Shown piece by piece: positions 49-24,520 of a DNA stretch of 64,000 nt (the stretch's first letter is position 1; each line of letters opens with the position of its first letter). The DNA lies in the IMG/VR virus record IMGVR_UViG_3300032236_001859, positions 152,044-216,043 of that record; one strand, given 5' to 3'. The notes beneath the pieces are model-generated. The model ran no database searches and was not told the DNA's origin. It saw only the letters and a list, made by a program, of their open reading frames with translations. The position numbers were made by a program, and so were the translations under genes.

Positions 49-777
49 TCAGTACCTCATCGAGGGTTTGGAGGCATGACGCTTGGCAAGCACGGATGAC
101 AGAATCTTGTTGGTGTTCTGGGATCTCAGTTGATCCGCACGACGCTCCAGCAACCGCTTCTCCACCATGATGCGTTCAATGTCCTCATCGGTTTCGTCTT
201 CACCGAAGATATGACCCATGGTGGTCCCCGCGGTGCCGTAGACCCCAGAGGATACCCCGGCGACCCCCTTGATGGGTGCCGTGATTAAACCTGGATCAAC
301 AAGAAACGACGCGGCTTCTTTGACATGCCCGGTCTTACAGAACCCGGGGTGATCGATGAGCCCAGAGGCCCGGGCACCCTCGAGGTAGCCCAGCTGAACC
401 GCATTGCGGACATCCCGCTCAATTGCGAGTTTGATGAGTTCTGCCGGCGTCATTTTAGCGGCCTCCGTTCCAGTCTTCATGTTGAGGAGAGTACCCAATC
501 CGGCACCAAGAGTCTTCATCGTCGAAGCCGTGGAATCGCTGACCCCGAGCCACTTCGCTGCGATGGCGCCGATGCCGAGACCAACCCCGGCACCAATTGC
601 ACCCTGCATGACCTGAGTTGGAGTCACCCATGGTTTCGATGCCGGCTGCTGGGCAGCGGCGCGATCAATGATCTCAATGCTCTTGACCTTATCCCAAAGA
701 TTCAACGAGGGATCTGTGAACACCCTGTCCTTGGCGTCGCTCACCGCGATCATCGCTGCTGCGGATTCCATGGTCAT
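49..777 (-). CDS. Hypothetical virion protein with glycine-zipper segment and K-x-A motif
   Basis: 242-aa ORF directly downstream of the 1891-aa gene; GAIGAGVGLGIGAIA hydrophobic zipper; KEAA motif; C-terminal coiled coil. Confidence 0.6.
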   Translation of the reverse strand: MTMESAAAMIAVSDAKDRVFTDPSLNLWDKVKSIEIIDRAAAQQPASKPWVTPTQVMQGAIGAGVGLGIGAIAAKWLGVSDSTASTMKTLGAGLGTLLNMKTGTEAAKMTPAELIKLAIERDVRNAVQLGYLEGARASGLIDHPGFCKTGHVKEAASFLVDPGLITAPIKGVAGVSSGVYGTAGTTMGHIFGEDETDEDIERIMVEKRLLERRADQLRSQNTNKILSSVLAKRHASKPSMRY

Positions 778-779
778 GG

Positions 780-3700
780 CTACATCCCCATCTTTGAGCT
801 GGCCAGGTTTTTGGCGAGACCAATACTATCACCCCAGTTCGGCTCCGGTTTCCCGATGCGACCCCCCGTCATGCCTGAGATCATCATCTCGAATTGGTTG
901 TCGTTGAGATCCTTGAAAGCGGGATCCGCGGCTTGAACACGGGACTTCACGAAACTGGGGAGATAGTCATGTGCCATCTTGAGGTTGCCGAAGAACTTTG
1001 CGTTATCTGGGGCTTGCATCCACTGCTGCCATTTGCCTTCATTACTTGACGCGGCACGCATGGCTCCGAGTCTCTGGCTGACCACCTTGGCGCGGTAGTC
1101 ATCCATCTTCTTGGGATCCTTCTGGATCTCGGCGAGGAGGTTGGGGTCCTTCGGCGGCGGGATCTCGCCACCAGCGTTGTTCAGGGACTGATAGCGCTGG
1201 TAGGCGCCATAGGCACCACCACCGAGGACCAGGGCTCCCATGATGGCGCCGGCTTTGCCGCCCATGAGCATGAGCCCAAGCCCCACAGGGATCGCGGCGA
1301 GATCGAGGTTGTACTTCTGCGCCCAGTCCATGCCCTCTTGAGCCTTGGCCTTGGCTTGATCCCACACCGAGGGTTCTTCCTTCTTCACGGCATCAGGATT
1401 GTTTGGAGTCGTCTTCGCTGGTTCCGTGGTCTGTGCTGTCTGTGTGCGTTGCTTCGCCGCATTCGACTTCGCAACGGCGTCTGCCTTTTCCTGTTGAGTC
1501 AACGCAGGAGTCCCCGTGTTGCTCTCAGGGCCTGGAGGAGGGGTCTGTGGGGGTGTTTGTGGGGGTGTCTTAATGGAGTTCGTGTACGTCTTCGCCATGT
1601 CGCCTATGCCGGGGGTCTTCTGTGCCGGTGCTGGTGCTGGTGGCTGATCTGGATTCCCAATCAGATTATTAGCCCAATTCATGACACCTGTAACCGCAGG
1701 CTTGGCACCCTCTGTCAGGGCCTCGCCCATGGCAGCTGCGGCGAGTTTGCAGCCACGTGACCAAATGGCATCGGCACCGATCTTGTTCTGACCGGAAGCA
1801 GGGGGCATCGTCTTGGCAAGAGGTTTCACGGGCTGAATCTCCGTCGGCTTGACATTAGCGGGTTCTTTGGGAAGGGGAACCTCTGGAGTCTTCGCCGGGG
1901 TTGCACCTTTGGTCAGGTTTTTCTGATGGGCTTCATAGGCCTGCATGGCCTTGGCACGATCCCCGCCGGCCTGTGCCAGCCAATACTCGGGGTGGTAACT
2001 TTGTTGTGAGGGATCCCCTGGGGCCACCATGGGAGCCACGTTGCCTCGGAAAGTCTCAGGGAACAGGCCACGATACTTCGCGGGGTTACCCTGGATATGC
2101 GAGACGACATCCTCACGTGTCACCGGGCGTGCGGCATCGCCTTCCCCAATGAATCGAGTCGGGAGTCCGTTGTCGCCAATGATGTAATCCGGGGTGGGTT
2201 CAAATGGATTCGCTGGAGCCCCTGCCTTGGCTTGATGCTGACGCCAGTAAGCCTCCATGTTTTTATATGTGTCGGGGGACTTCGCTGCCCAGTGCTCGGG
2301 GTGCGCGGTTTGGTACCTCGAGATCCCGGAGAGATAGAGCCCTGGGTTGGTAAGTGGAGATTCGACTTGATACCCGCGACGTATGGCCTCTGGGCTCACC
2401 TGGGTGACCCGACCAGTGGTCTTATTGAAAGTCCACGCCGGGGTGTTGTCAGCACGAGGATCCCACTTCGAGGAATCAAACCCGTACTCCTGTGCCTTGA
2501 AGCCCTGAGGGGGCTCCTGGTCGCCGGCGAGATCATGGGCGTTACCCTTGGTGTCGACGTAATACCTTCCCTGTGCAGTCGGGGGTTCAACTTTGTCGAA
2601 CCCATACTTTTCACCCAGTTCCTGCAAGAGTTTCTGGGTCTGCGCGGGGTTCACGAAAGTGTTGTCTTTGAATCTCTCGATCATCCCGGGGCCACCACCG
2701 AGGTGATGACCACCCTGAGAACGCACGTCTTGGTTCAGCGTGTACAAGGAGGCATTGGCTCGTGTCAGCGGTGCCAGGATCTCTTTTGCAGCGTTCTCGG
2801 GGAGTCTTGATACCTTGGTGTTAAAGATGAGTTCAGCGTTGGGATCCTTGGGATCCACGTTGAGACGCTGATACGCCGCTGCCTTCGCGGCTTCTCGGCG
2901 ATCCTCGAGAACGATACGCTGATTCTTCAGGGAGTCGTTTCCAGTGGAATCGAAACCGTACCGAGAGTTCGTGGGATCCCCTGGACCCCCATAGGTCTTG
3001 CCGCCCCATGAATACTTTTCACTGGCGCGATCGCTTCCCCTGTACTCGATGAGGAGATCCCCGAGCCCATTCTTCTTGAGATCATCGATGATCTCCTGCT
3101 TCCGGATCTCGCCACGCTGAAGCATCTTTGGCTTCATGACATCCGTGTAATCCGTGGTCTTCACCCGAGCTTTCGCCATGATCTGTTCGGGGCTCAGCCC
3201 AGTGGTCTCCGTGACCATCTTCGTGATCTCCGGGGATCCCAGCTCCTGGGTGTCCTGGGGGCGCAACAGGGTGCCCAGGATGCCCTGGACCCCTTTGTGA
3301 ATCGCATGCGGGGAGTTCTGGGAGATATCGAAGCGCGGCTTCTCCCCGAACCCCATCCCAGTTGAGAACTCATTGATCTGTTGAGTCGCCGGGGCGAGAG
3401 TTGTTGATACCTGGGATAACGCTGATTTGAGTTCCTCGTGGGACTTCGCGGATTCCATCGAATTGACAATGGAGTCAGTTTGGGATTTCCAGTAATCCTG
3501 GGCTCTCTGAGAAAGCTGGTCCTTGTACTCCGAGGGGAGATGTTGGTACAGCGGGCTAGTATCCAGGGCATCACGAACCGTGGTCCCCACGCGTTCATGG
3601 GTCGCCGCCACAGAGGTCCTCGCGATATCCCTGAGATCGCGATCCCCGAGGACATTAAAGAGCCCCTTGAGCTGGCCTGCAGATTTGTTCTGGCGATCCC

Positions 3701-6455
3701 ATGTGGCGACATCGACTCCCGGAGGTGCATTGCCCTTTGGTTTCGATGTGCCGATTACCGTGGAGATCAGGGAATCAAATGGATTCCCCTCCCCCTTTTC
3801 CAAACTGTCGACATCGATGACACCTGCTTTGAAAGGTTCGGCTTTCTCCTTCATGATGTTAAACGCGCGATCACCAATTGTACTCGCCAACATCAATCTG
3901 AGGTCCGGTGGTAATCCGGCGAATATCGGGTTGTCTTTAACGGTACCATTCGCGAACTCGATTGCGCCCTGCATGAGCTTGGCGTCGACCAGCATCTCGG
4001 CACCTTTTTTGTAACCGGCACCAACTGCGTTCAGCTTGCTTTCATCGCCACCTTGGTTGATGTATGCCGCCTTGCCCTGCCGAACCGCGAAGGCCTGGAG
4101 GGGGCTCAGGGTGGTCCCCCAGAACCCCATACCTTTGCCACCATTAGCGAACGTGTTCTGGGCGACCTCGGCGATCTTGGAGTCATCGTATGACGAGGAC
4201 CCCGAAAGCATGCCGTAGCCCCATCTCCCGATATCCATCGTAGACGAGACGCCCTCCATGATGATCGCACCGGCTGCGGTGTTCACGCTCAGAGCACGAA
4301 CCCCCTTGAGGACTGAACCCAGTTTAACAGCTGCGGAGGCCCCTGTGGCCGCAGGCGCCCCGCCTGGGGTTGACGTGAGCACCCTGGCAGTGGACTTCAT
4401 GCGATCGAGAACACTACCATATGCCTTGGATGCCGCTGCACCGGGATCTGCTACTGTTTTGGCAACACTGCTGCCGGCACGGGCTAGGGCACCACCAGCG
4501 GCCTTTGTGGCCTCAACGGGGTGGGCTACCGAGCTATAGATTTTACTGACTACCTTCAGTGGACTCGCCCCAGGTGGGGTCTGGGCCTGGACAGCGTTCT
4601 GTGTCGCCTTGTCGAGCCCCCGCCACCAGAGTTGCTGGGCACCAAAGTGCGCGGAGGTATCAATGGTCTGCTCCCCGATCTGGAGAGCCGAGCTCTTTAT
4701 CCAATCAGCAACCGGGATGTCTTTGTTTGTGGGGTTGTTCCACCTGTTATAGCAGGCACCGCCGACGCCGGCCAAAGTGGCCATGATGGGGAGCCCGGCG
4801 ATGCTGCCATGCCGGGACATCAGCGCTGATGCCATGAGTCCCGTGTTCTGCGCCGTGTTTCCGAAGTTGTTGTGGTCCCTGAGTTCCCGGTAGAGGTCCG
4901 ACCCCGGTTGGATCTTCTGATCCAGAATGGAGTTCACCCTGGCCTGGGCGGCATCCACGGGTAACCCACGGACTTCTTGGAGTGCGTCTTGGATCTCTCG
5001 AAAATGGTTGTGATAGTTGATTACATTGGGATCACTCCCCACGATCTTCGCACCCTTTTTGTCGATGCGATTCGTGTTGAGATCCTGCGGCATAAAAGGA
5101 GCCGCCGCAGGAGTGCATGACCCAAGTTTCGGTAAGAACAATTCAACGGGGACGTCAAGCCAGTTCGATAGCGACGACGCGGTTTCCGCAGCAGGACGCG
5201 TCCCCGTGCTCACCATGTCGTAGTGGTCACGGACCCTTCGCAGGATATGATCGGCTTCGAGTCCCGCACGGATCCCGGATTCATTCTTAACACGGGTGAA
5301 AACGGATCTCGCGGCATCAACTGCTCGCTCCAGGAACTCTGGGCTCTTCTCGCTCCATTGCTTGATCTCAGCGGGGTTCTCAGGGATCCCCATCTTCAGG
5401 AACTCTGTGGCCATGGCATGCGCGGGATTCAAGGGATCCCCAGCAGCAGCCTTCATACCCGTGACGACATCCGCGATGAATCCAGCGCGAAGACTGGAAC
5501 CGAGCTCACGGGATTCCGGGGAGTCCGGGTTCTCGACAAACGCGGCTAAGGCGGCCTCAGGGTTGATACCCTTCTTCGCGGTATCGACTCGATACGCCTT
5601 CAGGGCCTCGGCGAGATTGGAGGGCTTCCCGGTCCTCTCGGATTCCAGGATCGCAGCATTCGCTGAGGTCAGGAGATCGGGTTTGCCATCCTCTGAGTTC
5701 AAGAGAACAGGGAGTCCAGTTTTCTTGTGGGCGTGGTAGCCCACGGCGAGATCGATGATGTCATGGGAAGCCTTATCCGCGGAGGCCTTGTTCCAGAGAT
5801 CCCCGGTGGCCCCGGTTTCGGCCTGCCATGATCTAATGATTTTATCCGTGGGGGCCCCTGCTGCCCTCCCATTTGCCCAGGCCTGTGCGGCGAAATAACG
5901 CTTGGCCATCCAGTCCTTGGCAGCGGCATCCGGGTTGGGTCCATCCAGTTTTGGGGGTGGTGCCCATCGGGAATCAAACTTGAAGTCGCCATCTTTGGCT
6001 TCGGCATCAGACGACAGCATGTCCACGTATTGATCTCGGACCCCTGGAGACAACGTCTTCGGGATCGAGGTGAGCTCAGGGGCCATCGTGGCGGCGCCAG
6101 CGTTGACCTGTTTGGTGAGCTCCTTCGAGGGAGTCTTTCCACCCGCAATGGTATCAACGAGATCGCTGACCCCAGGGATTCGCATGGCACCAATTGAGGT
6201 CAGGGCTTCGCGGGCCTTATCGGGGTAGTTCTTGATCCAGAGATACCCCGCGGCACCGAGACCACCGATGGCTGCCAACCAGATCCAGGAGTCAGACTTC
6301 TCGTCATCCTCGTCGTCATCAGGGGCCCGTGAATGCGCGGCGAGTTTGCGTGTCTTCCCATGCCCAAAGAAATTGGGGGTGTTGTTGCGGAGTTCCTCAA
6401 TGGGAAAATGAGCACGTCTGGCTTTGACGTGCTTGATTTCCTTCTTGGGCTTCAT
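780..6455 (-). CDS. Very large (1891 aa) putative virion internal/ejection or tape-measure-like protein
   Basis: Ala/Gly-rich helical ORF; ATGA overlap with the portal-like gene; TM-like segments near both ends (WIWLAAIGGLGAAGYLW; AIPVGLGLMLMGGKAGAIMGALVLGGGAYG); two KLAA motifs; Pro-rich linkers. Confidence 0.55.
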   Translation of the reverse strand: MKPKKEIKHVKARRAHFPIEELRNNTPNFFGHGKTRKLAAHSRAPDDDEDDEKSDSWIWLAAIGGLGAAGYLWIKNYPDKAREALTSIGAMRIPGVSDLVDTIAGGKTPSKELTKQVNAGAATMAPELTSIPKTLSPGVRDQYVDMLSSDAEAKDGDFKFDSRWAPPPKLDGPNPDAAAKDWMAKRYFAAQAWANGRAAGAPTDKIIRSWQAETGATGDLWNKASADKASHDIIDLAVGYHAHKKTGLPVLLNSEDGKPDLLTSANAAILESERTGKPSNLAEALKAYRVDTAKKGINPEAALAAFVENPDSPESRELGSSLRAGFIADVVTGMKAAAGDPLNPAHAMATEFLKMGIPENPAEIKQWSEKSPEFLERAVDAARSVFTRVKNESGIRAGLEADHILRRVRDHYDMVSTGTRPAAETASSLSNWLDVPVELFLPKLGSCTPAAAPFMPQDLNTNRIDKKGAKIVGSDPNVINYHNHFREIQDALQEVRGLPVDAAQARVNSILDQKIQPGSDLYRELRDHNNFGNTAQNTGLMASALMSRHGSIAGLPIMATLAGVGGACYNRWNNPTNKDIPVADWIKSSALQIGEQTIDTSAHFGAQQLWWRGLDKATQNAVQAQTPPGASPLKVVSKIYSSVAHPVEATKAAGGALARAGSSVAKTVADPGAAASKAYGSVLDRMKSTARVLTSTPGGAPAATGASAAVKLGSVLKGVRALSVNTAAGAIIMEGVSSTMDIGRWGYGMLSGSSSYDDSKIAEVAQNTFANGGKGMGFWGTTLSPLQAFAVRQGKAAYINQGGDESKLNAVGAGYKKGAEMLVDAKLMQGAIEFANGTVKDNPIFAGLPPDLRLMLASTIGDRAFNIMKEKAEPFKAGVIDVDSLEKGEGNPFDSLISTVIGTSKPKGNAPPGVDVATWDRQNKSAGQLKGLFNVLGDRDLRDIARTSVAATHERVGTTVRDALDTSPLYQHLPSEYKDQLSQRAQDYWKSQTDSIVNSMESAKSHEELKSALSQVSTTLAPATQQINEFSTGMGFGEKPRFDISQNSPHAIHKGVQGILGTLLRPQDTQELGSPEITKMVTETTGLSPEQIMAKARVKTTDYTDVMKPKMLQRGEIRKQEIIDDLKKNGLGDLLIEYRGSDRASEKYSWGGKTYGGPGDPTNSRYGFDSTGNDSLKNQRIVLEDRREAAKAAAYQRLNVDPKDPNAELIFNTKVSRLPENAAKEILAPLTRANASLYTLNQDVRSQGGHHLGGGPGMIERFKDNTFVNPAQTQKLLQELGEKYGFDKVEPPTAQGRYYVDTKGNAHDLAGDQEPPQGFKAQEYGFDSSKWDPRADNTPAWTFNKTTGRVTQVSPEAIRRGYQVESPLTNPGLYLSGISRYQTAHPEHWAAKSPDTYKNMEAYWRQHQAKAGAPANPFEPTPDYIIGDNGLPTRFIGEGDAARPVTREDVVSHIQGNPAKYRGLFPETFRGNVAPMVAPGDPSQQSYHPEYWLAQAGGDRAKAMQAYEAHQKNLTKGATPAKTPEVPLPKEPANVKPTEIQPVKPLAKTMPPASGQNKIGADAIWSRGCKLAAAAMGEALTEGAKPAVTGVMNWANNLIGNPDQPPAPAPAQKTPGIGDMAKTYTNSIKTPPQTPPQTPPPGPESNTGTPALTQQEKADAVAKSNAAKQRTQTAQTTEPAKTTPNNPDAVKKEEPSVWDQAKAKAQEGMDWAQKYNLDLAAIPVGLGLMLMGGKAGAIMGALVLGGGAYGAYQRYQSLNNAGGEIPPPKDPNLLAEIQKDPKKMDDYRAKVVSQRLGAMRAASSNEGKWQQWMQAPDNAKFFGNLKMAHDYLPSFVKSRVQAADPAFKDLNDNQFEMMISGMTGGRIGKPEPNWGDSIGLAKNLASSKMGM

Positions 6456-8332
6456 TGTGGGGCTCCGCCGCCACCGGGTGGCTGGCCTCCCTGACCACCT
6501 TGGAGAATCATCTGCTGGCCCTGTGATGACGCCTGCTGACGGACTTCATCCAGTTTGGCCTTGACGAGGCCGTGGAGATCTTTGTTGCCCTCGCGAAGAG
6601 CCTTGAGTTGTTGTTTGCGGTCGTACTCGGGCATCCCGGCGAGTTGCCCCGCGATCTGCTCGGCTTGGGCAGCCATGCCTCCAAGCGTGCTGGCATTGGC
6701 ACCGCCGCCTGCGGGGATCCCACCCATTGGAGCACCGCCCATTGGGGTTCCCGGTGGAGGTGGTGCACCGGCACCGCCGCCTTGCTGCTGGGCGGCCTGC
6801 TGTTGTTGCAGCATCCCCGACGGGCTCTGGGCTCCGGCGAGGGCGCTGACAGCACCCATCTCCTGATCCTTGGCTGCCTTGTCGTCCTGCTCTTTCTGGA
6901 GTTCCTGGATGAACTCTTGGTGCTTGAAGACCTTTCGGGCTTCATCACCGGCGAGGACCCCAAGGGGTTCCAGGGCAGTCTGGGGACTGATCTGATTAGC
7001 AGCCATGAGCTGCATGAGGATATTCTTGCGTTCCTGGTCATCCGCGATGGTACTGCGTTGGATGCGGACATCGGTTTCCTCGAGACCAAAGTTACGTGCC
7101 GCAACTTTAACGATCCATTGTAGGATCGAGGTGTACATCGCGGGTACCGCTGACCACGCGGATTCAAATAGCCGCAGGGCCATCGGAGCCGCCTGGGCAG
7201 TCAGAGTCATCTGGTGGTACTCAAGCGGAACATTGCACTGATTCAGGGATTCCTGTTGACGAAACTTTAACTTATCCGCGGGGAGGAGATCCTTGCCTTC
7301 ACCACCCAGGAACTGGTAGTTCACGGGGTATGGGGCGGTGTGATACGACATGGGTTCGGCACGATGGGCATTGATGATGCGATTCATGCCGCCAACAAAG
7401 TTATCCATGCCATGTTGGATCATGGGGTCGTTCTGGTTCGCCATCGCCGGCGAAATCAAACGGAGACCCAAGGTGTAATCGGAAGCAATGGCTTGGTCGG
7501 CACGGTTCAGGATCTGCTGCAACCAGAATGTCCGGAAGTTGGAGATCGAGGCGGGTACACCCCAGCCGCGAGTCCGCATCCCTGAGATCACGGGTTCGTC
7601 GACGTGATAGATCATGTCTTCGTCGAAGAGGAGACGCCCATTGACGGCAACGGCTTCGAGGACCTCGATGGGGGTGTCATCAATGAAGATGCGCGCCTTC
7701 GACATGATGTCTTGACGGAAATCGTTGGGGATCCGCCACCAGATATTCTTACGTTGCGACCAAAAGTTCTGGGCGATCTCGATCTCAAAGGGGGAGTAGC
7801 GGAGGACACGGATCCGAGAGATATCGGGGTCCTTGCGATCCCGGAGCACGAAGTCCTGAGTGTTCCCACACTGGGGGCATGGCTTCTTGCGAAGCCAGCG
7901 GACCCCTCGCTGAGAAGTCAAATCAATGGTGTAGTCGACATGCTTGATGGGCTGCTCGAAGTAACAATGCGGGCAGGACAGATTCCGTTTGAATGGTAAG
8001 TAGATCGATAGGAATACGTTGCCGTAGCACAGGAAGTCGGACCCCGCGGCTTTGAGTTCTCTCTGATAATTGAGGTGCTTCTGGAAGAGATCCTTGAACT
8101 CGGACTCCTCGTTCTCGGATAGCGCCGGGAATTGAACACTGGTGATGAAGTGGGCGATCACACGTCCAAAAGCGGAACGATAGTTGCCATCGGTGAGCCA
8201 GAGGTACTGGGCCCACCACATGATGAGCTCATGGTTGGTGGGCATCACCGTGGAGGCATAGTCGAGCCAGGGGACATGGAGCTGACGAACGGCTTGGCCG
8301 CGATCCCCACCATTGACATTGAGATTTGCCAT
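6452..8332 (-). CDS. Probable portal protein with Zn-ribbon insertion and Gln/Gly/Pro-rich tail
   Basis: 626 aa; N-terminus (PWLDYAS..WAQYLWLTDGNYRSAFGRVIAHFIT), GxP.G.P-like mid region and ISPQTAL segment resemble large-phage portals from memory; CPHC...CPQC insertion; lies in head-gene context. Confidence 0.55.
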   Translation of the reverse strand: MANLNVNGGDRGQAVRQLHVPWLDYASTVMPTNHELIMWWAQYLWLTDGNYRSAFGRVIAHFITSVQFPALSENEESEFKDLFQKHLNYQRELKAAGSDFLCYGNVFLSIYLPFKRNLSCPHCYFEQPIKHVDYTIDLTSQRGVRWLRKKPCPQCGNTQDFVLRDRKDPDISRIRVLRYSPFEIEIAQNFWSQRKNIWWRIPNDFRQDIMSKARIFIDDTPIEVLEAVAVNGRLLFDEDMIYHVDEPVISGMRTRGWGVPASISNFRTFWLQQILNRADQAIASDYTLGLRLISPAMANQNDPMIQHGMDNFVGGMNRIINAHRAEPMSYHTAPYPVNYQFLGGEGKDLLPADKLKFRQQESLNQCNVPLEYHQMTLTAQAAPMALRLFESAWSAVPAMYTSILQWIVKVAARNFGLEETDVRIQRSTIADDQERKNILMQLMAANQISPQTALEPLGVLAGDEARKVFKHQEFIQELQKEQDDKAAKDQEMGAVSALAGAQSPSGMLQQQQAAQQQGGGAGAPPPPGTPMGGAPMGGIPAGGGANASTLGGMAAQAEQIAGQLAGMPEYDRKQQLKALREGNKDLHGLVKAKLDEVRQQASSQGQQMILQGGQGGQPPGGGGAPQ

Positions 8333-8344
8333 GGAGTCAGAACC

Positions 8345-8554
8345 TTATCGTGGGCTCGGGTGATAATCGTGTAACAGTGTGGCCTGAGCACACAGGCGCT
8401 GGATGTTCTCGGCGGCGACCTCATCACTTATCCCGACAACGGCGAAAACACGGGAGTTCATGCGAATCGCGGTCTCGGCTCCGGCGTCTTCAGCGATCGC
8501 GGCGAGCACGGGCTCCGTAAAGGCGTCAGCGCAGTGTGGCATAGGAATCCCCAA
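8345..8554 (-). CDS. Small hypothetical protein
   Basis: Fills the gap between two minus-strand genes; weak RBS before the MPHC start. Confidence 0.3.
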   Translation of the reverse strand: MGIPMPHCADAFTEPVLAAIAEDAGAETAIRMNSRVFAVVGISDEVAAENIQRLCAQATLLHDYHPSPR

Positions 8555-8605
8555 TTCAGGTAGCAGCGGTGTCCCAGCGTACCCCGAGGGGCAAACCGGA
8601 CAAGA

Positions 8606-9487: not shown

Positions 9488-9507
9488 GAGTTATTCCTTA
9501 TGCTGGA

Positions 9508-9535
9508 AGTCTCGACGGGGTTCACTGAGCGTCAA
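9508..9535 (-). promoter_or_regulatory. Promoter TTGACG-N16-GAGACT with internal GTGAAC
   Basis: Overlaps the methyltransferase stop codon, upstream of the 293-aa gene. Confidence 0.45.
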
Positions 9536-10385: not shown

Positions 10386-11677
10386 GCCGGCTGGAGTTCG
10401 GGATGAGAGTGATCTGCAGGGGCATATCGTATGCGTGGCCCTGCACTGCGTGGTGCGCGTGGAGCCCGCGTAGGCGCTGGTGCTTCGTCTTCGTCAGACA
10501 TCGACTTGTACAACAAATAGCCAAGCCCGAGTACGGCGGCACCCCCCGCGCTGTACTTCAGAATCTTCACGGCCTCTGGGGATGTGACGAAATCAGTTAC
10601 CTTCTTGAAGGATTTGGAAATATCGTCGACCGACTTCGCAGTGTCTTTTACGCCGGAACCCAAGTTGGTTACCGCGTCGGATGCCTTGTCAGCAGAGCTG
10701 GTAACTTTAGACACTGAACTATCGATATTCTTCAAAGTGGACCCAGCGTCCTGAGTCAAACTCTGGACACCTCCGAGGGCACCAGTCAATGCCTTCATCG
10801 CCGGAGTGGTTTCATTGGCAGCATTAGCCACAGCACCCGCGCCCTGTTCAACTGACTTCGCAGCACCAGCAGCGGATTGCCCGACCTCGTCCACATTCTT
10901 ACGAAGAGACTTGACCCCCTCGGAGACATCCTGGCCGACCTGCTTAACTGTGCCAGTAGACGTATTGACTACATCCCGAACACCTTGATCAACTGCCGAA
11001 AGTAGACCTGGCTTTCCATCTTTGTCTTGTAGTTTCTCTTTTGTTGTCCCTGCGATGTCGTTCGCCTTGCCTAGTAAACCGGCACCATAACTTGCAGCCT
11101 CTACGCCTGCGGCAGCAGCACCTAACCCTAGTTTTTGCTTGACGACATCATTTATCCACGTGTCCTGGCGGGCACGTGATGCCAGAGGCGACAAGACTGC
11201 GTGGGCAAGCTCTGGGTCTGCAGAGGAAACAGTTTCAACCCTATTAGTGGTGGGGGAGTGAAAACTGAACTCATGTGCACCTGTCTGTGGGTTTAACTTC
11301 CACAGTGGAGATCTTGATAAATCCATTTTGCCCTCAGCGGCATCTCGGAGATGCCGTTGCGCCAACCCAAAATCCTTACCACTCATCCCATGGCGAGTTG
11401 ACTTGGTAGCCAGGGATCCCCCAAGGATCCCTGCTATTCCGGCTTCACTCCCGGCCCCGATTGGATCCTGCCCCGCAGCAGTAGCGCCTGCGTAGGTTGC
11501 ACCGGCTACAGGTAACCCCACTAACAGCGGCGCCGGGGTCCTCCCCACCAATGCACGTGCACCGGTAAGTGCAGGTGATACCCCTGATGACAGCGCATCC
11601 ATTGCTCCGATGAGCCCCCTGCGATCTGCGGCTACCTTTTTAGTCAGATAAAAAAGCATGATCTGAGCTGGACTCAT
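10382..11677 (-). CDS. Putative virion membrane-associated protein with amphipathic helical repeats
   Basis: 431 aa; KVAA at residue ~13-16; Gly/Ala zippers; ~130-aa 11-mer-like repeat region; C-terminal TM (AGGAAVLGLGYLLY). Confidence 0.6.
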   Translation of the reverse strand: MSPAQIMLFYLTKKVAADRRGLIGAMDALSSGVSPALTGARALVGRTPAPLLVGLPVAGATYAGATAAGQDPIGAGSEAGIAGILGGSLATKSTRHGMSGKDFGLAQRHLRDAAEGKMDLSRSPLWKLNPQTGAHEFSFHSPTTNRVETVSSADPELAHAVLSPLASRARQDTWINDVVKQKLGLGAAAAGVEAASYGAGLLGKANDIAGTTKEKLQDKDGKPGLLSAVDQGVRDVVNTSTGTVKQVGQDVSEGVKSLRKNVDEVGQSAAGAAKSVEQGAGAVANAANETTPAMKALTGALGGVQSLTQDAGSTLKNIDSSVSKVTSSADKASDAVTNLGSGVKDTAKSVDDISKSFKKVTDFVTSPEAVKILKYSAGGAAVLGLGYLLYKSMSDEDEAPAPTRAPRAPRSAGPRIRYAPADHSHPELQPA

Positions 11678-13761
11678 GACTGGGACTCCTGTGGAGGCAT
11701 CGGTGCAGTCTGTGCGACTTCTTCTGGGTTCTGGATCTCCGGGGTCTCAGGCTTCGCCGCCTTCGACTTCCGGATCGCACGATGGATCACACGTGCCCTG
11801 GCACGATCAAGATTACGGAATGGCTTATTGATGGCTAGACCCATGGATCCGTAGACCTGTTTGAGGACTTGGTCATGGGGGAGCCACTCACCGGGGAAAT
11901 CCGCGGGTGCCTCGCCTTCACCGAGATGAAAGGCGTAGTCGTAGCCGTGGTACCCAGGCTCCGCGACACCCTCATCAGGAAGAACGCGGACGTTGGATGA
12001 GTAAGGTGCAGGGGCCCCCTTACCCTCGGTGGGGAAATGAAACCGACGGTTGCTGTCACGTCGGACCAATACTTTACCTTCGGGATCCAAATAGACGTAC
12101 TCGGTCTTAGGAAGCAGCGCGGCAGCATCTGCCTGCTTCTTCAATGGCATCTCGGTGTGCGTGGCCAGTACGTCATCTCCGACCCCGCCTGTGAAAAACT
12201 CGGTCTCATCAAAGTAGGTGACCCCTGCGGCTTCAGCGGCACCCTCGTCATCGGGGGAGTTACCAACCATGCAGATCACGGGATCCAGAGAGAACGCTTC
12301 TTCGGCGTATTCGATCATCGCTGGAGACGGCTTCCGGCCGGCGTCGTCTTCATCGGTACAGAACACGATGTCGTCGATCTCGGGGAGGAGCTCAAGGGTT
12401 TCATCATTGAAGTCGAGGACATCGGGGAGCGTGTTCGTCCCCATGACACTGCGGTTGGTTACCCCAACGATGCGGACCCCTGCAGCCTTAAACTTCTTGA
12501 GGAGTTCTTTGACCCCTGGTTTGATCTTCTGGGTGGCCTCGAGGCCGGCGTCGTCATCCCATTCGGCGACAACGGTACCATCGAGGTCAACGAGGAGTCC
12601 TGGTGCCGACTCAGGCGTCTTGTCCTGGAACTTATGGGTTCTCATGGACCCCGAGATCTCCGCGGCATGCTTCTCGGCGAGATTGTTGGTGTGCTTGGCC
12701 ATCGTGAAGTCCCCGTTGGTTGGGGAATCCCCGCTGCGGAGGACAACCAGAACTCTGCCATCCGGGAATCTCCGGACTTCATCGAAGTAGTGGCCATGGG
12801 CGGCCTCGAGATCCTGGAGCGCCTTCACGAAGACCTTGGGGTCCTTGGGGGCATAGATGCGACGAAGACTGTTACGGTACAGTGCCCAGCCGTGATGCTG
12901 CCGGGGCACACTGGCGAGTTTCTTACCCTTGAGCTCGGGATCCTTCTTCGCCATGTCCCTGGCGGCCTCGACGAGTTCGAGGCGGACCTCGTTGGCTCTC
13001 TTGGCCCAGTCGTTCTTAGCAATGAGTTCTTTGAGCCTGGTAATCAGCGTAGCAAAGGGGATCACATCGAAATCCTCCCGATCCGGGTGTGTGGTCCCCA
13101 GTTTGCCGTCATGGACCCCAGTGAAGAAATATGTGCGTTCGCCATCGAATGCGGAGTCATCCCAGAAGTCGTTGACCCCACTTGGCCAAATCGATTCTAC
13201 GATCTCACGAGTCTCCGGAGAAATGATCTTGAGATCGGCTTCCTCGATGGCTTCCCGGATCGCGGCGAGTAACGGGGGTTCGCCGTCATCGATGCCGCCA
13301 CCGGGGAACAGGATGTAGTCGCCCTTGTCGATGCCGACGACGCCATCCTTATCGAAGGCGATGAGTTCGGATCTCGGTCGCAGGAGTTGCGATGGGGAAC
13401 CCTCGTGCTTATCGGGAGTGGGTTCGTTCTCAGCGGCTTTCTTGCCGAGACCCCTGGCGAAGCTGTGATCCCTGCGTTGTTTCGCCAAGGCGGCCTCATC
13501 AGGTTCGACATCCTTGGGTTTCGCCGGCAGCATCTTCTTCGCGTTGGTCCACACCTTCTCCGCAGGAGATGGGAGGTCGTGGTCCTCTGAGGTCCCCCTG
13601 CAGTCGCCACCACTGAACAGTTCAAGAAAGGTTTTGCCCTCGACCATGTGGGCATTGGTTGCCTTGACAGGATTCCCACCCGTTGGCGTCGCCACAGGTG
13701 TGTTGGTCACGGGGCGATCACTACCCCGCCCCGGAGATGGAATCTTGGTCTCCGCTCGCAT
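11674..13761 (-). CDS. Multidomain NUDIX hydrolase + HAD class IIIA (GmhB/HisB-like) phosphatase + degenerate NUDIX-like domain
   Basis: Nudix box GGIDDGEPPLLAAIREAIEEADL; HAD motifs DLDGT, VTNRS, RKPSP, VGNSPDD; C-terminal YLDPEGKVLVRR..FHFP lacks the Nudix box. Confidence 0.8.
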   Translation of the reverse strand: MRAETKIPSPGRGSDRPVTNTPVATPTGGNPVKATNAHMVEGKTFLELFSGGDCRGTSEDHDLPSPAEKVWTNAKKMLPAKPKDVEPDEAALAKQRRDHSFARGLGKKAAENEPTPDKHEGSPSQLLRPRSELIAFDKDGVVGIDKGDYILFPGGGIDDGEPPLLAAIREAIEEADLKIISPETREIVESIWPSGVNDFWDDSAFDGERTYFFTGVHDGKLGTTHPDREDFDVIPFATLITRLKELIAKNDWAKRANEVRLELVEAARDMAKKDPELKGKKLASVPRQHHGWALYRNSLRRIYAPKDPKVFVKALQDLEAAHGHYFDEVRRFPDGRVLVVLRSGDSPTNGDFTMAKHTNNLAEKHAAEISGSMRTHKFQDKTPESAPGLLVDLDGTVVAEWDDDAGLEATQKIKPGVKELLKKFKAAGVRIVGVTNRSVMGTNTLPDVLDFNDETLELLPEIDDIVFCTDEDDAGRKPSPAMIEYAEEAFSLDPVICMVGNSPDDEGAAEAAGVTYFDETEFFTGGVGDDVLATHTEMPLKKQADAAALLPKTEYVYLDPEGKVLVRRDSNRRFHFPTEGKGAPAPYSSNVRVLPDEGVAEPGYHGYDYAFHLGEGEAPADFPGEWLPHDQVLKQVYGSMGLAINKPFRNLDRARARVIHRAIRKSKAAKPETPEIQNPEEVAQTAPMPPQESQS

Positions 13762-14483
13762 CAGATACCTCCGAGATACCGGATCGCATAGGCTCCGAGT
13801 CTGCGGAGTTCAACTGCTGTCTTGGGAAGATTGGGGCCCATGCCATAGCTGGCACCAGTGGACTGGGTTGGCGGGCTACCGGGCTGACCACTGGCCGTGG
13901 ATGTCATGGGCTGCGCCTGGGCGACACCCCCGGTGCCCGTGCCGGGGTTGGATCCCGGGATGCCACCGACTTGACCACCAGGTGGGATAATGGTCTTTGA
14001 GCGATGCTGGGGGTCCACGGCGAGATCACCAGGGCCCTGGTTCTGTTGAACCCCTATGGCACCCGGTGCGGGTCGTGCGCTCACATTGGGAGTCGACGAG
14101 GCCCGGTTGGGGGGTTGTGGGACACCGCCAGCAACCGCCTTCTTCTCCAACTTCTCAGATTCCGTGTAATACCTGGGATTCTTGGCGAGATGATCGATCG
14201 AGAGTTCTTTCCGGGCCTCAAGATTGGGAGTGTGTTCACCCTCTTCCTTGATCCCCTTGGCGAGTTCCTTGACACTCAGCTTGCCATGCGGGGGTGTCGT
14301 GCCCCCAAGGATGGCAGCTGCATGCTTGCCGATGCCGAGCTCCCAGGACTCCTTCTTCCAGTTCTTGTGGTCACGCTTCTGCTTCGCGGCGGTTGCGTAA
14401 AACACGCGTTCGGCCTTTTCCTTACTGCCGTAGGTGTCTTCCATGGAGTTCAGAACTTTCTTGGCATCACCGACAATAGGCAT
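13761..14483 (-). CDS. Hypothetical virion protein with DUF5661-like domain and K-x-A motifs
   Basis: ELAKGIKEEGEHT...IDHLAKNPRYY resembles the DUF5661 pattern as recalled; N-terminal SMEDTYGSKEKAERVFYAT is a common small phage motif; KHAA, KKAV and KTAV motifs. Confidence 0.55.
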   Translation of the reverse strand: MPIVGDAKKVLNSMEDTYGSKEKAERVFYATAAKQKRDHKNWKKESWELGIGKHAAAILGGTTPPHGKLSVKELAKGIKEEGEHTPNLEARKELSIDHLAKNPRYYTESEKLEKKAVAGGVPQPPNRASSTPNVSARPAPGAIGVQQNQGPGDLAVDPQHRSKTIIPPGGQVGGIPGSNPGTGTGGVAQAQPMTSTASGQPGSPPTQSTGASYGMGPNLPKTAVELRRLGAYAIRYLGGI

Positions 14484-15600: not shown

Positions 15601-15625
15601 GGTATGCTCACTTCCTGTGTTCGGC

Positions 15626-21028: not shown

Positions 21029-21029
21029 A

Positions 21030-24000: not shown

Positions 24001-24050
24001 CGCAGCTGCCTGCCGTCAAAGAATACCGGCTTCTGAGGAGTGCTTGGCAT
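21030..24050 (-). CDS. Tail fibre protein (DUF2793-like N-terminal domain)
   Basis: RWITGTLPTGAWFGHPNALAAYRDGAWVFTP pattern; repeated GALxVxGGxGIGG fibre motifs; C-terminal beta-sandwich (LAFSNLP..VVLHITNGG..FPANTRW..VDII). Confidence 0.7.
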   Translation of the reverse strand: MPSTPQKPVFFDGRQLRRVSATNPIATSTLETDVVTTDGLHPFVANIAGIAATADAHLTTRQVVDRRIADGFWGGPVQAITNTPPGSPSAEQRWITGTLPTGAWFGHPNALAAYRDGAWVFTPAAEGVFVFNRATHSYVHYTGSAWAPILGTGTVTSVGLVLPPEFSITFSPVTTLGDLSAEWAVQSPGLVFAGPSDPLGSSAVPAFRALVETDIPSLSWNHIGSDLPTTLSGYGITDGALNGAVGSSGLTMNTARVLGRFSADPGAIEEISIGTGLNLSALGVLSCTITAALATGLVGFGGGDGILTGSTNFSYNSTLATGGLTIANTTASISAVTGALKVAGGIGAGGDIFAAGTLNSTSTATTDSTTPGALNLTGSIRTLYGTLGHLTGTVYGIYDSVTLNPLSSSIGAFYSQYHSIALTGAEDFSIAVGENTTLTDTKTAGTVNSIIGYRTSLSFNCAGSTVGAASLFRGNWSYTAGTITTGYGLYLPSITGATTNYAIYTGTGLVTLGDTSVAVGATGVSALNMVGGIKQVISYAPNATVDRTARYLEVNITPTVSRNGRYMGDTVSQRLYGGYNFGVIYGYRADLTVSTTAGTLSGFYGIDSEFYMDTAGGTCTTAALFYGSLGGSAGTLTTAYGLLLEDITFGQTNYAIQTGLGLVRFGDTTVSTTAANGALVVTGGVGIGGALNVGGALTAGGVGTLGGLKVLATGITAPAAPAGTIAQVINGNGNAGVTRVLADVAMGIGGGYAVFAGRACRGTLTAPSALQAGDEITNLSAWGYGATGYSSAARGFVSIFTAENWTDAAQGTRIGLWTTTPGTILTTEKVRIWGDGGLQIGGAFSASPGAGALIVTSAAASVSTLTGSITSAGGMGLLGSIYAGGDVSVGGTLIIKNVNEPVNAIGNTGAGTITINCLTATRITMTVTGAVTLAFSNLPASGVSKTVVLHITNGGSQTFNFPANTRWSGGIAAVLTASGVDIIGMTTLDGGVTWDAIPMSLNAKVP

Positions 24051-24520
24051 TATTCGTCCTCACTGCTGTCTCGGCTCAGGAACTTGTTAAGAAGATATGC
24101 GGAGCCCAGGCCAAGGCCGGCGCCAGCTGCGGTGCCCCCTGCGGCGATCCCAGTGGTCTCCATGGGGGTGCCTTCGCCATAACGAGCATGCCGTCTCGCG
24201 AGTTCACCACCGAGGCCGGCGCCGAGTTCAGTACCTGCACCACCGAGAACCCCCGTGATCGCACCCTTCATGGTATCCCGAAGTCTGTCACCCTTCTTCG
24301 CAGTCAGGTACTTGTAGGCACCGAGGCCGAGGCCACCGATGAGAGCACCCTTCCATGGCATCCCCATGCCCAGGGATTCCGCGAGACCGACACCTGGTGT
24401 CGGGTTGGGGGTCGGGAGATCATAAACTGGTACGGGTGGGCGAGGTGGTTGTGCCAGCAGTGGAGTCGCCTCTGCGGCGACTTTAACAAGACTGGTGGCC
24501 AGGAAGACGTCAAGTGTCAT
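24050..24520 (-). CDS. Small glycine-zipper virion protein with K-x-A motif
   Basis: 156 aa; VKVAA at residue 12-16; three GxxxG-rich hydrophobic segments. Confidence 0.6.
   Translation of the reverse strand: MTLDVFLATSLVKVAAEATPLLAQPPRPPVPVYDLPTPNPTPGVGLAESLGMGMPWKGALIGGLGLGAYKYLTAKKGDRLRDTMKGAITGVLGGAGTELGAGLGGELARRHARYGEGTPMETTGIAAGGTAAGAGLGLGSAYLLNKFLSRDSSEDE

What the first reader, a model, noticed from the sequence alone, without database searches (positions are those of the whole stretch)
310..24484. Recurring K-x-A(A) motif at domain boundaries of many virion-module proteins: candidate Lys-specific head maturation/polyprotein code
Seen: K-x-A-[A/S/D/V] occurs in six otherwise unrelated head-module proteins at informative positions. 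These are KEAA (310-321), KLAA twice in the 1891-aa protein (6336-6347, after a ~40-aa basic leader; 1731-1748), KVAA near the N-terminus of two proteins (11627-11641; 24473-24484), four sites in the NUDIX-HAD protein, and three in the 240-aa protein (14313-14327, ~14131-14150, 13812-13823). It is not obviously placed this way in the RNR, glycosyltransferase or tail-fibre proteins. Established: T4 gp21 cleaves after I/L-x-E and phiKZ gp175 after S/A/G-x-E to mature head proteins and release internal proteins. Inference: this phage uses an analogous K-x-A signal, not one I know to be characterised, to process and possibly target internal head proteins.
Basis: partly seen in the sequence, partly recalled or inferred. 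Interest (0 to 1): 0.85.

Follow-up and report, generated by a model that had tools for sequence, protein, structure and literature searches.

The report
New phage head-protease cleavage code K-x-A
A short Lys-x-Ala signal recurs at protein starts, domain junctions and scaffold proteins across a poorly known group of large phages. It most likely tells their head-maturation protease where to cut, so the packaged protein cargo could be predicted from sequence alone.

Summary
Within the window alone the motif is not beyond chance: K.AA occurs 12 times against about 5 expected and ranks 83rd of 24,000 comparable motifs. One claim is wrong, because the RNR also has KFAA at residue 14.

Relatives show the signal is real.
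- K-x-A-[AQSGDE] occurs 55 times in residues 2-25 of 317 non-redundant neighbourhood proteins, against 16.7 expected. These sites fall in 35 unrelated families.
- The motif separates the modules of the NUDIX-HAD cargo polyprotein family.
- The motif precedes that family's C-terminal domain as K-x-A-D in 68 of 70 diverse members.

About 18 kb outside the window, the same contig encodes a prohead-serine-protease homologue, flanked by scaffold-like proteins. In those proteins K.A is the top-ranked of 1,600 motifs. The major capsid protein there has a 24-residue leader ending in KAAA.

The cultured Salmonella phage Arash shows the same pattern. The same counting method recovers L/I-x-E in T4.

Cleavage itself and the bond that is cut are untested.

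The parts
11674..13761 (-). 695-aa NUDIX-HAD cargo polyprotein. Module order: TGGNP module, NUDIX, middle domain, HAD/PNK3P-like phosphatase, C-terminal degenerate NUDIX-fold domain. Predicted protease substrate.
   Evidence: Pfam NUDIX 2.6e-8 and HAD 3.4e-11. Members of this family fill the top 7 places, and 8 of the top 9, when all neighbourhood proteins are ranked by K.A[ADGS] excess. 77 diverse relatives were found, with variable architectures.
13432..13443 (-). KKAA, residues 107-110. Junction before the NUDIX module.
   Evidence: Aligned relatives have KLAG, KTAG or KEAG followed by a conserved E..EP. BLAST HSPs of relatives start at residues 97-106.
12910..12921 (-). KLAS, residues 281-284. 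Junction after the NUDIX module.
   Evidence: Relatives have KQAA, KQAG, KRAS or KLAA at the aligned position. HSPs end at 283-288.
12661..12672 (-). KHAA, residues 364-367. Junction before the HAD module.
   Evidence: Not kept at the aligned position in the divergent locus homologues. Representatives P0003, P0004 and P0005 have AKTAG in the corresponding stretch (after the Pterin_4a-like match, before the HAD match), and P0002 starts LAEKHAAD. These equivalences were read off the sequences, not aligned.
12127..12138 (-). KQAD, residues 542-545. Start of the C-terminal domain.
   Evidence: 68 of 70 representatives at <=50% identity have K-x-A-D here and 2 have K-x-G-D. The 10 preceding residues are not conserved. 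In the AF2 model (pLDDT 91.7) the motif lies in an unstructured 7-residue tail before strand 1 of a NUDIX fold.
13761..14483 (-). 240-aa protein with a DUF5661 module. Sites: KHAA 53 (14316-14327), KKAV 114 (14133-14144) and KTAV 221 (13812-13823).
   Evidence: K-x-A is kept at site 53 in most relatives. KKAV closes the DUF5661 module, and the same module is fused into polyproteins of L011 and L012, where it is followed by K-x-A.
11627..11638 (-). KVAA, residues 14-17 of the 431-aa coiled-coil protein (10382-11677). Predicted end of an N-terminal leader.
   Evidence: The leader MSPAQIMLFYLTK-KVAA is kept in L002. L001 has KVAM followed by KEAA. It is one of 52 such leaders.
24473..24484 (-). 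KVAA, residues 13-16 of the 156-aa protein (24050-24520). Predicted end of an N-terminal leader.
   Evidence: It fits the leader consensus, with hydrophobic L at -2 and E at +4. No homologue was found in the fetched loci, so conservation is untested.
6336..6347 (-). KLAA, residues 37-40 of the 1891-aa post-portal protein (780-6455). End of a basic leader of about 36 residues.
   Evidence: It is identical in L001 and L002 although the body falls to 33% identity. Non-homologous post-portal giants in L004, L006, L009, L012 and L015 have related basic leaders ending in K-[QLF]-A-[QAI].
1737..1748 (-). KLAA, residues 1570-1573 of the 1891-aa protein. Possible internal junction.
   Evidence: It is kept as KLAA or KLAV in L001 and L002. 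The C-terminal part is a separate gene with its own K-x-A leader in relatives. The alignment of the junction itself is not convincing.
310..321 (-). KEAA, residues 153-156 of the 242-aa Gly-zipper protein (49-777). Probably not a real site.
   Evidence: It is not conserved outside close relatives. A nearly invariant K-x-[AGS] column lies 5 residues upstream (K148, window 325-336, KTGH here).
6452..8332 (-). Portal protein, which anchors the module.
   Evidence: PF05133 at 9e-4 and phrog_64 at 1.4e-4. 27% identity to the annotated portal of phage Arash, E 8e-52. Its KVAA at residue 409 lies in a conserved helix and is not kept in most relatives.
30556..30567 (-). KFAA, residues 14-17 of the RNR.
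   Evidence: The Arash RNR alpha subunit starts without any leader. From my own knowledge, the following residues resemble the conserved RNR N-terminus; this was not tested here.

Best explanation
K-x-A followed by a small or polar residue (A, Q, S, G, E or D), usually with a hydrophobic residue two positions before the Lys, is the recognition motif of this phage clade's prohead (capsid-maturation) serine protease.

The protease gene lies on the same contig, about 18 kb beyond the window's start (L050:13443-14837).

Proposed sequence of events, all inferred from sequence and by analogy with T4 gp21 and phiKZ gp175:
1. Proteins destined for the head interior carry a short N-terminal leader (median 12 residues) or are strung together as polyproteins.
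2. They are co-assembled into the prohead with scaffold-like proteins.
3. The protease removes the leaders.
4. It chops the scaffold-like proteins at 6-11 sites each.
5. It trims 24-27 residues from the major capsid protein.
6. It trims itself.
7. It releases the separate enzyme modules (NUDIX, HAD phosphatase and, in relatives, DNA ligase/LigD-PE and C39 peptidase) of the portal-adjacent cargo polyprotein.

The scissile bond is most likely after the Ala, giving P3 = Lys and P1 = Ala. This matches the P3/P1 geometry of T4 and phiKZ motifs and the Ala-Ser specificity of the homologous herpesvirus assemblin.
For: N-terminal leaders:
- K.A[AQSGDE] occurs 55 times in residues 2-25 of 317 non-redundant proteins, against 16.7 in shuffles of the same N-termini (0 of 1000 shuffles reach it). 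Reverse and substituted control motifs are not enriched.
- Site density is 0.82 per 100 aa in the first 20 residues and about 0.33 elsewhere.
- 35 unrelated families are involved.
- The residue at -2 from the Lys is L, F or M in 33 of 50 leaders. Codon usage at the sites resembles background, with no single codon preferred, so the signal is at protein level.

Polyprotein junctions:
- K-x-A-D precedes the C-terminal domain in 68 of 70 representatives.
- K.AA occurs 92 times against 29 expected and ranks 18 of 24,000 motifs. Those I recognise among the higher-ranked ones are NUDIX-core or Q-rich.
- In relatives an internal K-x-A lies about as far upstream of the shared TGGNP module as Met1 does in the window protein and L004.

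Protease:
- PHROG 'head maturation protease' hit at 5.5e-7.
- A conserved family of 59 homologues of roughly 420-450 aa with invariant H101 and S152.
- AF2 model with pLDDT 82.7.
- 34 BFVD matches at E<=1e-3. Nearly all those that carry a functional name are prohead or head-maturation proteases (one is a ferritin/DPS protein).

Context of the protease:
- K.A ranks 1 of 1,600 motifs in flanking scaffold-like proteins in L053 (40 against 13, p 1.4e-9) and L050 (34 against 14.6).
- The same holds in cultured phage Arash (32 against 14.2).
- The capsid protein (homologue of the Arash MCP, E 9e-19) has a leader ending KAAA, KEAQ or KEAG at residues 25-27.
- The protease family has conserved K33-x-A35, KPAD 210-213, K221-x-A223, K247-x-A249 and a K-x-A before its C-terminal tail.
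- Arash tail genes lack N-terminal sites.

Method control: the same enumeration on T4 gp67, gp68 and gp22 returns L.E at rank 1 and I.E at rank 3, with K.A at rank 115.
Against: - No experimental cleavage data exist for any member.
- Within the window alone the motif is not significantly enriched.
- Matches to solved protease structures are weak: HSV-1 protease E 0.37; T4 gp21 TM 0.51 (normalised to gp21) but E 1.6.
- The catalytic assignment of H101 and S152 rests on invariance and spacing, not on superposition.
- Some motif instances are clearly not sites (RNR KFAA, portal KVAA), so the tripeptide alone is not sufficient.
- The orthologous families retained after my redundancy filter are not fully independent counts.
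- That the window's portal-adjacent proteins are head-internal is inferred from synteny and from Arash virion proteomics, which lists 116 proteins and may include contaminants (PMC10585845).
Confidence: 0.74

Rival explanations
1. Chance or compositional by-product. The virion-module proteins are rich in Ala and Lys, and a loosely defined four-residue pattern chosen after the fact will always be found at 'informative' places.
For: In the window K.AA ranks 83rd of 24,000 motifs. KAA and AAK are also over-represented, less strongly. K.A overall gives 44 against 41. RNR and portal carry the motif too.
Against: There is positional enrichment at N-termini against shuffles of the same residues. K-x-A-D is near-invariant next to unconserved flanks in 70 diverse proteins. 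K.A ranks 1 of 1,600 motifs in three lineages of scaffold-like proteins, but not in T4.
Confidence: 0.04
2. K-x-A is a non-cleaved docking or targeting motif. It would be a short linear peptide that binds scaffold, portal or capsid interior for packaging, or a site of another lysine modification, rather than a protease site.
For: The motif marks leaders and the unstructured tail before the C-terminal domain. T4 capsid-targeting sequences act by binding before they are cut. No cleavage has been observed.
Against: Six to eleven copies per scaffold-like protein, and conserved copies flanking the protease's own catalytic domain, are the signature of protease substrates. The counting method gives the true cleavage motif for T4 scaffolds. 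Targeting alone does not explain sites at every module junction of the polyproteins.
Confidence: 0.12
3. The sites are cut, but by a different enzyme. Candidates are a peptidase embedded in the cargo proteins (as proposed for polyvalent proteins), a host protease, or another phage protease not yet found.
For: One relative's polyprotein (P0006) carries a Peptidase_C39 module at E 1.2e-14. Polyvalent proteins are proposed to self-process through embedded peptidases (PMC5512222).
Against: The C39 module is present in only 1 of 9 polyproteins scanned and is absent from the window protein. The conserved C-terminal domain is a NUDIX fold, not a peptidase. The motif is densest in proteins adjacent to the prohead-protease homologue and in that protease itself.
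Confidence: 0.08

Closest known systems
Phage T4 gp21 prohead protease with its substrates (gp23, gp24, scaffold gp22/gp67/gp68, internal proteins IPI-III and Alt with their ~10-residue capsid-targeting leaders)
   Same: - Gene cluster of protease, scaffold-like proteins and capsid protein.
- Multiple sites per scaffold protein.
- A capsid-protein propeptide.
- Short N-terminal leaders on unrelated packaged proteins.
- A motif defined at two positions spaced i and i+2.
- Self-trimming sites in the protease.
   Different: - The motif is K-x-A, not L/I-x-E.
- The protease is about 440 aa with a long helical C-terminal half, and has no Pfam match or sequence-level PDB match.
- The cluster is separated from the portal by RNA polymerase genes.
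- Substrates include multi-enzyme polyproteins.
phiKZ gp175 / SPN3US gp245 prohead proteases of giant phages (S/A/G-x-E, AXE motif; PMC5694885, PMC10052503)
   Same: - A large phage with virion-associated multisubunit RNA polymerase.
- Many packaged or ejected proteins processed to remove N-terminal propeptides.
- Several motif copies inside propeptides.
- Protease auto-cleavage.
   Different: - P1 would be Ala (or Lys) rather than Glu.
- The clade is unrelated at sequence level. Its portal is SPP1-like (a weak match, below Pfam's gathering score), and its RNAP is a beta/beta' fusion.
- There are no proteomic data on cleavage.
Herpesvirus assemblin (cleaves V/L-x-A|S), structural homologue of phage prohead proteases (Cheng et al. 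2004, cited in PMC10052503)
   Same: - If cleavage is after Ala, the P1 Ala with a small P1' residue matches assemblin specificity.
- HSV-1 protease is the top, though weak, PDB Foldseek match.
   Different: - P3 is Lys, with a hydrophobic residue at P5 rather than P3.
- Fold similarity to solved structures is not significant by E-value.
Polyvalent proteins of phages and conjugative elements (Iyer et al. 2017, PMC5512222)
   Same: - The NUDIX-HAD family is a set of variable multi-enzyme polypeptides encoded next to the portal.
- They are presumably packaged and delivered with the DNA.
   Different: - Processing is predicted to be in trans by the head protease at a linear K-x-A code.
- It is not predicted to occur through an embedded metallo- or papain-like peptidase. 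Most members have no peptidase module.

Membership tests
Prohead serine protease system (HK97 gp4 / T4 gp21 / assemblin superfamily) | A protease gene with the prohead-protease fold in the same genome | tested here: met
   L050:13380-14837 hits phrog_18299 'head maturation protease' at 5.5e-7. The AF2 model gives 34 BFVD matches at E<=1e-3, and nearly all those that carry a functional name are prohead or head-maturation proteases. PDB matches are weak: T4 gp21 TM 0.51 with E 1.6.
Prohead serine protease system (HK97 gp4 / T4 gp21 / assemblin superfamily) | Conserved catalytic His and Ser | tested here: inconclusive
   H101 and S152 are invariant in 32 sequences at 36-59% identity, and lie 51 residues apart. 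Equivalence to the catalytic residues of solved proteases was not checked by superposition.
Prohead serine protease system (HK97 gp4 / T4 gp21 / assemblin superfamily) | Protease encoded beside scaffold and major capsid protein genes | tested here: met
   The order is the same in L050, L053 and phage Arash: scaffold-like proteins, protease, scaffold-like proteins, then the capsid protein. The L050 capsid protein matches the annotated Arash MCP at E 9e-19.
Prohead serine protease system (HK97 gp4 / T4 gp21 / assemblin superfamily) | Substrates carry a shared short cleavage motif, with many copies in scaffold proteins and one after the capsid-protein leader | tested here: met
   K.A ranks 1 of 1,600 motifs in three lineages. 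Capsid leaders end in K-x-A at residues 25-27. The T4 control recovers L.E and I.E.
Prohead serine protease system (HK97 gp4 / T4 gp21 / assemblin superfamily) | Demonstrated proteolysis at the motif | not testable with these tools
   This needs N-terminomics or in vitro cleavage. The Arash paper's supplement holds no peptide-level data.
T4 L/I-x-E or phiKZ S/A/G-x-E specificity class | Glu at P1 | tested here: not met
   The enriched motif is K.A. No x.E motif is among the eight top-ranked motifs listed for the clade's scaffold-like proteins; their exact ranks were not printed.
T4-type capsid-targeting-sequence cargo proteins | A short N-terminal leader ending in the protease motif on otherwise unrelated proteins | tested here: met
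   52 leaders with a median of 12 residues, in 35 families.
T4-type capsid-targeting-sequence cargo proteins | Proteins are packaged in the head and the leader is necessary and sufficient for packaging | not testable with these tools
   There is only indirect support. In Arash virion MS the portal-adjacent RNAP subunit and gp220-225 are detected (PMC10585845).
Polyvalent proteins (Iyer et al. 2017) | Two or more unrelated enzymatic domains in one polypeptide, with variable architecture among relatives, encoded beside portal or virion genes | tested here: met
   NUDIX + HAD in the window protein. Relatives carry LigD_N + ligase + NUDIX + DUF5661, NUDIX + C39, or a second NUDIX. In the eight portal loci where it was found, the gene lies within about 9 kb upstream of the portal.
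Polyvalent proteins (Iyer et al. 2017) | An embedded peptidase (MPTase or papain-like) proposed to self-process the protein | tested here: not met
   There is no peptidase domain in the window protein. C39 occurs in 1 of 9 scanned relatives. The conserved C-terminal domain has a NUDIX fold.

The most novel reading that the evidence does not exclude
The K-x-A code is a general, modular 'address and release' system. Any enzyme given a ~12-residue hydrophobic leader, or spliced between K-x-A junctions of the portal-adjacent polyprotein, would be packaged, freed inside the capsid by the head protease, and injected.

Under this reading the clade delivers a ready-made nucleic-acid toolkit with its DNA: an RppH-like NUDIX, a PNK-like phosphatase, LigD-phosphoesterase plus ligase, and multisubunit RNAP. 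The packaged proteome of uncultured members could then be read directly from sequence.
Probability: 0.35. Interest if true: 0.78.

Novelty: new variant of a known kind. Interest (0 to 1): 0.62.

Why it matters
Head-maturation proteases are known for only a few specificities. These are Glu at P1 in T4 and phiKZ-like phages and Ala-Ser in herpesviruses; my limited literature searches found no K-x-A specificity.

A new, sequence-readable code would have three uses.
- It would let one predict mature N-termini, scaffold turnover and, above all, the injected protein cargo from genomes alone. This applies to a deep and almost entirely uncultured clade of 150-216 kb phages, for which most proteins match no Pfam or PHROG family.
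- It gives a concrete mechanism for how polyvalent cargo proteins without an embedded peptidase could be resolved into separate enzymes.
- It is directly testable, because the cultured phage Arash shows the same pattern.

Tried and rejected
- **242-aa protein (49-777) as the protease.** Rejected. It has no invariant Ser, His or Cys, and it is Gly-zipper and coiled-coil like. The PDB profile search found nothing.
- **293-aa and 256-aa families as the protease.** There are no catalytic-type invariants and no PDB hits.
- **C-terminal K-x-A-D domain as the protease.** Rejected. The confident AF2 model has a NUDIX fold, with E. coli RppH the best match, and the Ser of the SMG motif is not invariant.
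- **Pfam and PHROG scans.** Most window proteins over 200 aa, and the proteins downstream of the RNAP, gave no protease or capsid hit inside the window.
- **Megablast of the window against GenBank phages.** No match.
- **tblastn of the C-terminal domain against GenBank phages.** No match.
- **Global motif enumeration over all neighbourhood proteins.** It was confounded by repeated orthologues and showed no general K.A excess. This is what showed that the signal is confined to particular protein classes.
- **Fusion/fission argument for KLAA at residue 1570 of the 1891-aa protein.** The alignment of the junction was not convincing.
- **RNR KFAA as a real leader.** Judged unlikely.
- **Arash supplementary tables.** They contain no peptide-level data.
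- **DNA-level explanation of the motif.** Rejected, because no single Lys or Ala codon is preferred at the sites.

Full report
**The window**

All credible genes lie on the minus strand. The window is the last 64 kb of a 216-kb IMG/VR contig, with window position = contig position - 152043.

In transcription order the left part encodes:
- a tail-fibre protein (21030-24050);
- an 1800-aa protein;
- small proteins;
- a 240-aa DUF5661 protein;
- a 695-aa NUDIX-HAD protein;
- a 431-aa coiled-coil protein;
- a methyltransferase-like protein;
- a 293-aa protein;
- the portal (6452-8332);
- an 1891-aa protein;
- a 242-aa Gly-zipper protein.

Most proteins match no Pfam or PHROG family.

**Checking the observation**

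A complete list of K.A[ASDV] sites is.

Within the window the case is weak.
- K.AA occurs 12 times against about 5 expected in the proteins of 49-25275. The nominal p is 0.003-0.009.
- KAA and AAK are also over-represented, less strongly.
- K.AA ranks only 83rd among 24,000 three-residue motifs, which is no more than chance allows for a motif chosen after looking.

**Relatives change the picture**

The portal finds 15 loci in viral contigs, at 51-100% identity. Across the divergent ones, K.A[ADGS] sites of the window proteins are retained at the aligned position in 32% of comparisons. Nineteen control motifs give 0-25%, with a median of about 8%.

The conserved sites are those of the NUDIX-HAD protein and the 240-aa protein. 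BLAST alignment boundaries between family members fall on these sites.

This family is a set of polyproteins of 176 to about 1,500 residues with shuffled modules: LigD phosphoesterase, ATP-dependent ligase, a TGGNP module, a Cys-rich module, NUDIX, HAD/PNK3P, DUF5661 and, in one case, Peptidase_C39. Members of this family fill the top 7 places, and 8 of the top 9, when all neighbourhood proteins are ranked by motif excess.

In relatives, an internal K-x-A-[AG] lies about as far upstream of the shared TGGNP module as Met1 does in the window protein and L004.

An exhaustive HMMER search with the C-terminal 154 residues found 77 representatives at <=50% mutual identity.
- In 68 of 70 the domain begins K-x-A-D, after ten unconserved residues.
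- In their N-terminal parts K.AA occurs 92 times against 29 expected and ranks 18 of 24,000. Those I recognise among the higher-ranked motifs are NUDIX-core or Q-rich.
- The extended logo is [ML]-x-K-[TLQ]-A-[AQSEG]-[DE].

**N-terminal leaders**

The post-portal proteins of relatives, although unrelated to each other, nearly all start with a short leader ending in K-x-A-[AQSG].

I tested this over 317 non-redundant proteins from 35 of the fetched loci.
- The motif density is 0.82 per 100 residues in the first 20 residues and about 0.33 elsewhere.
- In residues 2-25 there are 55 sites against 16.7 in shuffles of the same N-termini (0 of 1000 shuffles reach 55).
- Reverse, R.A, E.A, K.G, K.L and KA. 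controls are flat.
- 35 BLAST-unrelated families carry such a leader.
- The median leader is 12 residues.
- The residue two before the Lys is L, F or M in 33 of 50 leaders.
- No single Lys or Ala codon is preferred at the sites, so the signal is in the protein and not in the DNA.
- The ~36-residue basic leader of the 1891-aa protein ends in KLAA. Related leaders of non-homologous giants in five relatives end in K-[QLF]-A-[QAI].

**The protease**

Nothing in the window looks like a protease. I excluded three candidates:
- the 242-aa, 256-aa and 293-aa conserved families;
- the polyprotein's C-terminal domain, whose AF2 model (pLDDT 91.7) is a degenerate NUDIX fold closest to RppH. In that model the K-x-A-D lies in an unstructured tail before the first strand.

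Walking along the contig beyond the window passes a beta/beta' fusion RNA polymerase and a beta' C-terminal subunit. It then reaches L050:13380-14837. The evidence that this is the protease is as follows.
- It hits the PHROG family 'head maturation protease' at 5.5e-7.
- It belongs to a conserved family of 59 homologues, most of about 420-450 residues, several interrupted by inteins. At least two of these homologues lie on contigs of the same lengths as contigs that carry portal and polyprotein relatives.
- H101 and S152 are invariant, 51 residues apart.
- The AF2 model (pLDDT 82.7) gives 34 BFVD matches at E<=1e-3. Nearly all those that carry a functional name are prohead or head-maturation proteases (one is a ferritin/DPS protein). 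Unnamed matches include phage G gp19 and proteins of phiRSL1 and PaBG.
- Matches to solved structures are weak. HSV-1 protease is top at E 0.37. T4 gp21 has TM 0.51 (normalised to gp21) but E 1.6.

**Context of the protease**

| Protein in L050 | K.A[AQSGDE] sites |
|---|---|
| 499-aa protein | 8 |
| 333-aa protein | leader ending KQAA at residue 12 |
| 508-aa acidic protein, just after the protease | 11 |
| small protein of about 145 aa | 6 |
| 312-aa protein (the major capsid protein) | 24-residue leader ending KAAA |

The 312-aa protein is identified as the capsid protein because it shares 26% identity with the annotated MCP of phage Arash, at E 9e-19 and 96% coverage.

A relative whose protease is only 42% identical (L053) has the same gene order. 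There the site counts are 10, 11 and 9 against 2.2, 3.3 and 1.6 expected, and the capsid leader ends KEAQ before the same conserved DMVTDFTR.

An enumeration of all 1,600 two-residue motifs, with no prior choice, puts K.A first in both lineages (p 1.4e-9 and 1e-5).

The protease family itself has conserved K-x-A at residues ~33-35, 210-213 (KPAD), 221-223, 247-249 and before its C-terminal tail. This is where self-trimming sites would be expected.

**A cultured member**

Salmonella phage Arash shares 27% portal identity and the same portal-to-RNAP synteny. It shows the same pattern.
- gp222 is the protease homologue, at 33% identity and E 3e-30.
- The MCP gp226 has KEAG at residue 27.
- In gp219-221 and gp223-225 (the protease gp222 left out) K.A is again rank 1 of 1,600, with 32 against 14.2.
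- Its tail genes have no N-terminal sites.
- Published virion proteomics detect gp220-225, and the portal-adjacent RNAP subunit is the most abundant species (PMC10585845). No peptide-level data are available.

**Method control**

The same enumeration on T4 gp67, gp68 and gp22 returns L.E first and I.E third. That is the known gp21 motif. K.A is at rank 115.

**Interpretation**

The best explanation is a prohead-protease maturation system of the T4/phiKZ type with a new recognition motif: Φ-x-K-x-A followed by a small or polar residue.

What is shown:
- the motif's positional enrichment and conservation;
- the existence and genomic context of a prohead-protease homologue;
- the parallel with T4 under the same test.

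What is inferred:
- that the motif is cut;
- that the cut is made by this protease;
- that cleavage is after Ala, making P3 Lys and P1 Ala, in line with the P3/P1 geometry of known phage motifs and with assemblin's Ala-Ser specificity;
- that the window's portal-adjacent proteins are packaged cargo.

- Well supported by conservation: NUDIX-HAD sites 107, 281 and 542; site 53 of the 240-aa protein; KLAA at residue 37 of the 1891-aa protein; KVAA in the 431-aa protein.
- Supported more weakly: NUDIX-HAD site 364, which is not kept at the aligned position in the divergent locus homologues and rests on unaligned inspection of four representatives; site 114 of the 240-aa protein, which is kept only in the two close relatives and L011.
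- Fits the consensus, but no homologue was available: KVAA in the 156-aa protein.
- Plausible but unproven: KLAA at residue 1570 and KTAV at residue 221.
- Probably spurious: KEAA at 310-321.
- Likely chance: RNR KFAA and portal KVAA.

**Comparison with known systems**

The system works like T4 gp21 and phiKZ gp175 / SPN3US gp245 (PMC5694885, PMC10052503). It is not a member of their specificity class, because Glu at P1 is not met.

The NUDIX-HAD family fits the definition of polyvalent proteins (PMC5512222). It lacks the embedded peptidase that was proposed to process them, and the K-x-A code offers an in-trans alternative.

My limited literature searches did not surface a K-x-A motif or this clade's maturation. 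That is not proof of absence.

Noticed in passing
L018:6278-12205 and L018:15195-17099 (same contig, outside the window); L015:17284-21690: A multisubunit RNA polymerase lies a few genes downstream of the portal. It is encoded as a beta + beta'-N-terminal fusion of 1,460-1,975 aa, with a separate beta' C-terminal subunit. In phage Arash the homologous subunit is the most abundant protein in virion MS, which suggests a virion-packaged RNAP.
   Followed up: partly
window 27184-30606: The ribonucleotide reductase gene is interrupted by a LAGLIDADG-type intein (PF14528 at residues 531-611; phrog_367 at 5.8e-84 in three stretches).
   Followed up: no
L002:8717-11572, L011:4746-7640, L012:9905-12775; P0097, P0121, P0124, P0127; L053:1-2031: Inteins recur in this clade. 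Portal proteins of 951-964 aa against 626 aa look intein-interrupted (inferred from length and a split alignment only). The prohead-protease homologues and an RNAP beta' subunit carry intein or homing-endonuclease Pfam domains.
   Followed up: no
window 11677-12138: The polyprotein's invariant C-terminal domain is a second, degenerate NUDIX fold (closest to RppH and Dcp2). I saw no Nudix box in it. It ends in a conserved LDRARAR basic helix. Its role is unknown; it could be an RNA 5'-end or nucleic-acid binder, or a packaging anchor.
   Followed up: partly
window 780-6455: The 1891-aa protein after the portal is hypervariable. Identity is 73% in a phage whose portal is 97% identical and 33% where the portal is 95% identical. 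In more distant relatives it is replaced by unrelated proteins. Only its leader and extreme C-terminus are shared.
   Followed up: partly
P0006 residues 613-740; P0006, P0012 and P0016 N-terminal regions: Some relatives' polyproteins carry a Peptidase_C39 module. They also carry a conserved module with an H-E-x-x-E signature and a GGGHH motif that matches no Pfam family.
   Followed up: no
window 35956-42881: There is a cluster of glycosyltransferase-like genes: a GT2 domain, a capsule-synthesis domain, and a weak sialyltransferase-like match. This suggests modification of virion, DNA or host surface.
   Followed up: no
window 9522-10385: A methyltransferase-fold protein (weak spermine-synthase match, below Pfam's gathering score) lies a few genes upstream of the portal in most of the relatives examined.
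   Followed up: no
L050:18599-20448: Endonuclease VII-like and HNH homing-endonuclease genes sit immediately downstream of the major capsid protein gene.
   Followed up: no
L003:19490 onward; L001:19505; L002:19240: The RNAP fusion proteins of the window's subclade begin M-x(4)-K-G-A-F, and Arash gp206 begins MPKSAS. This could be a very short leader with an atypical residue after the Ala.
   Followed up: no
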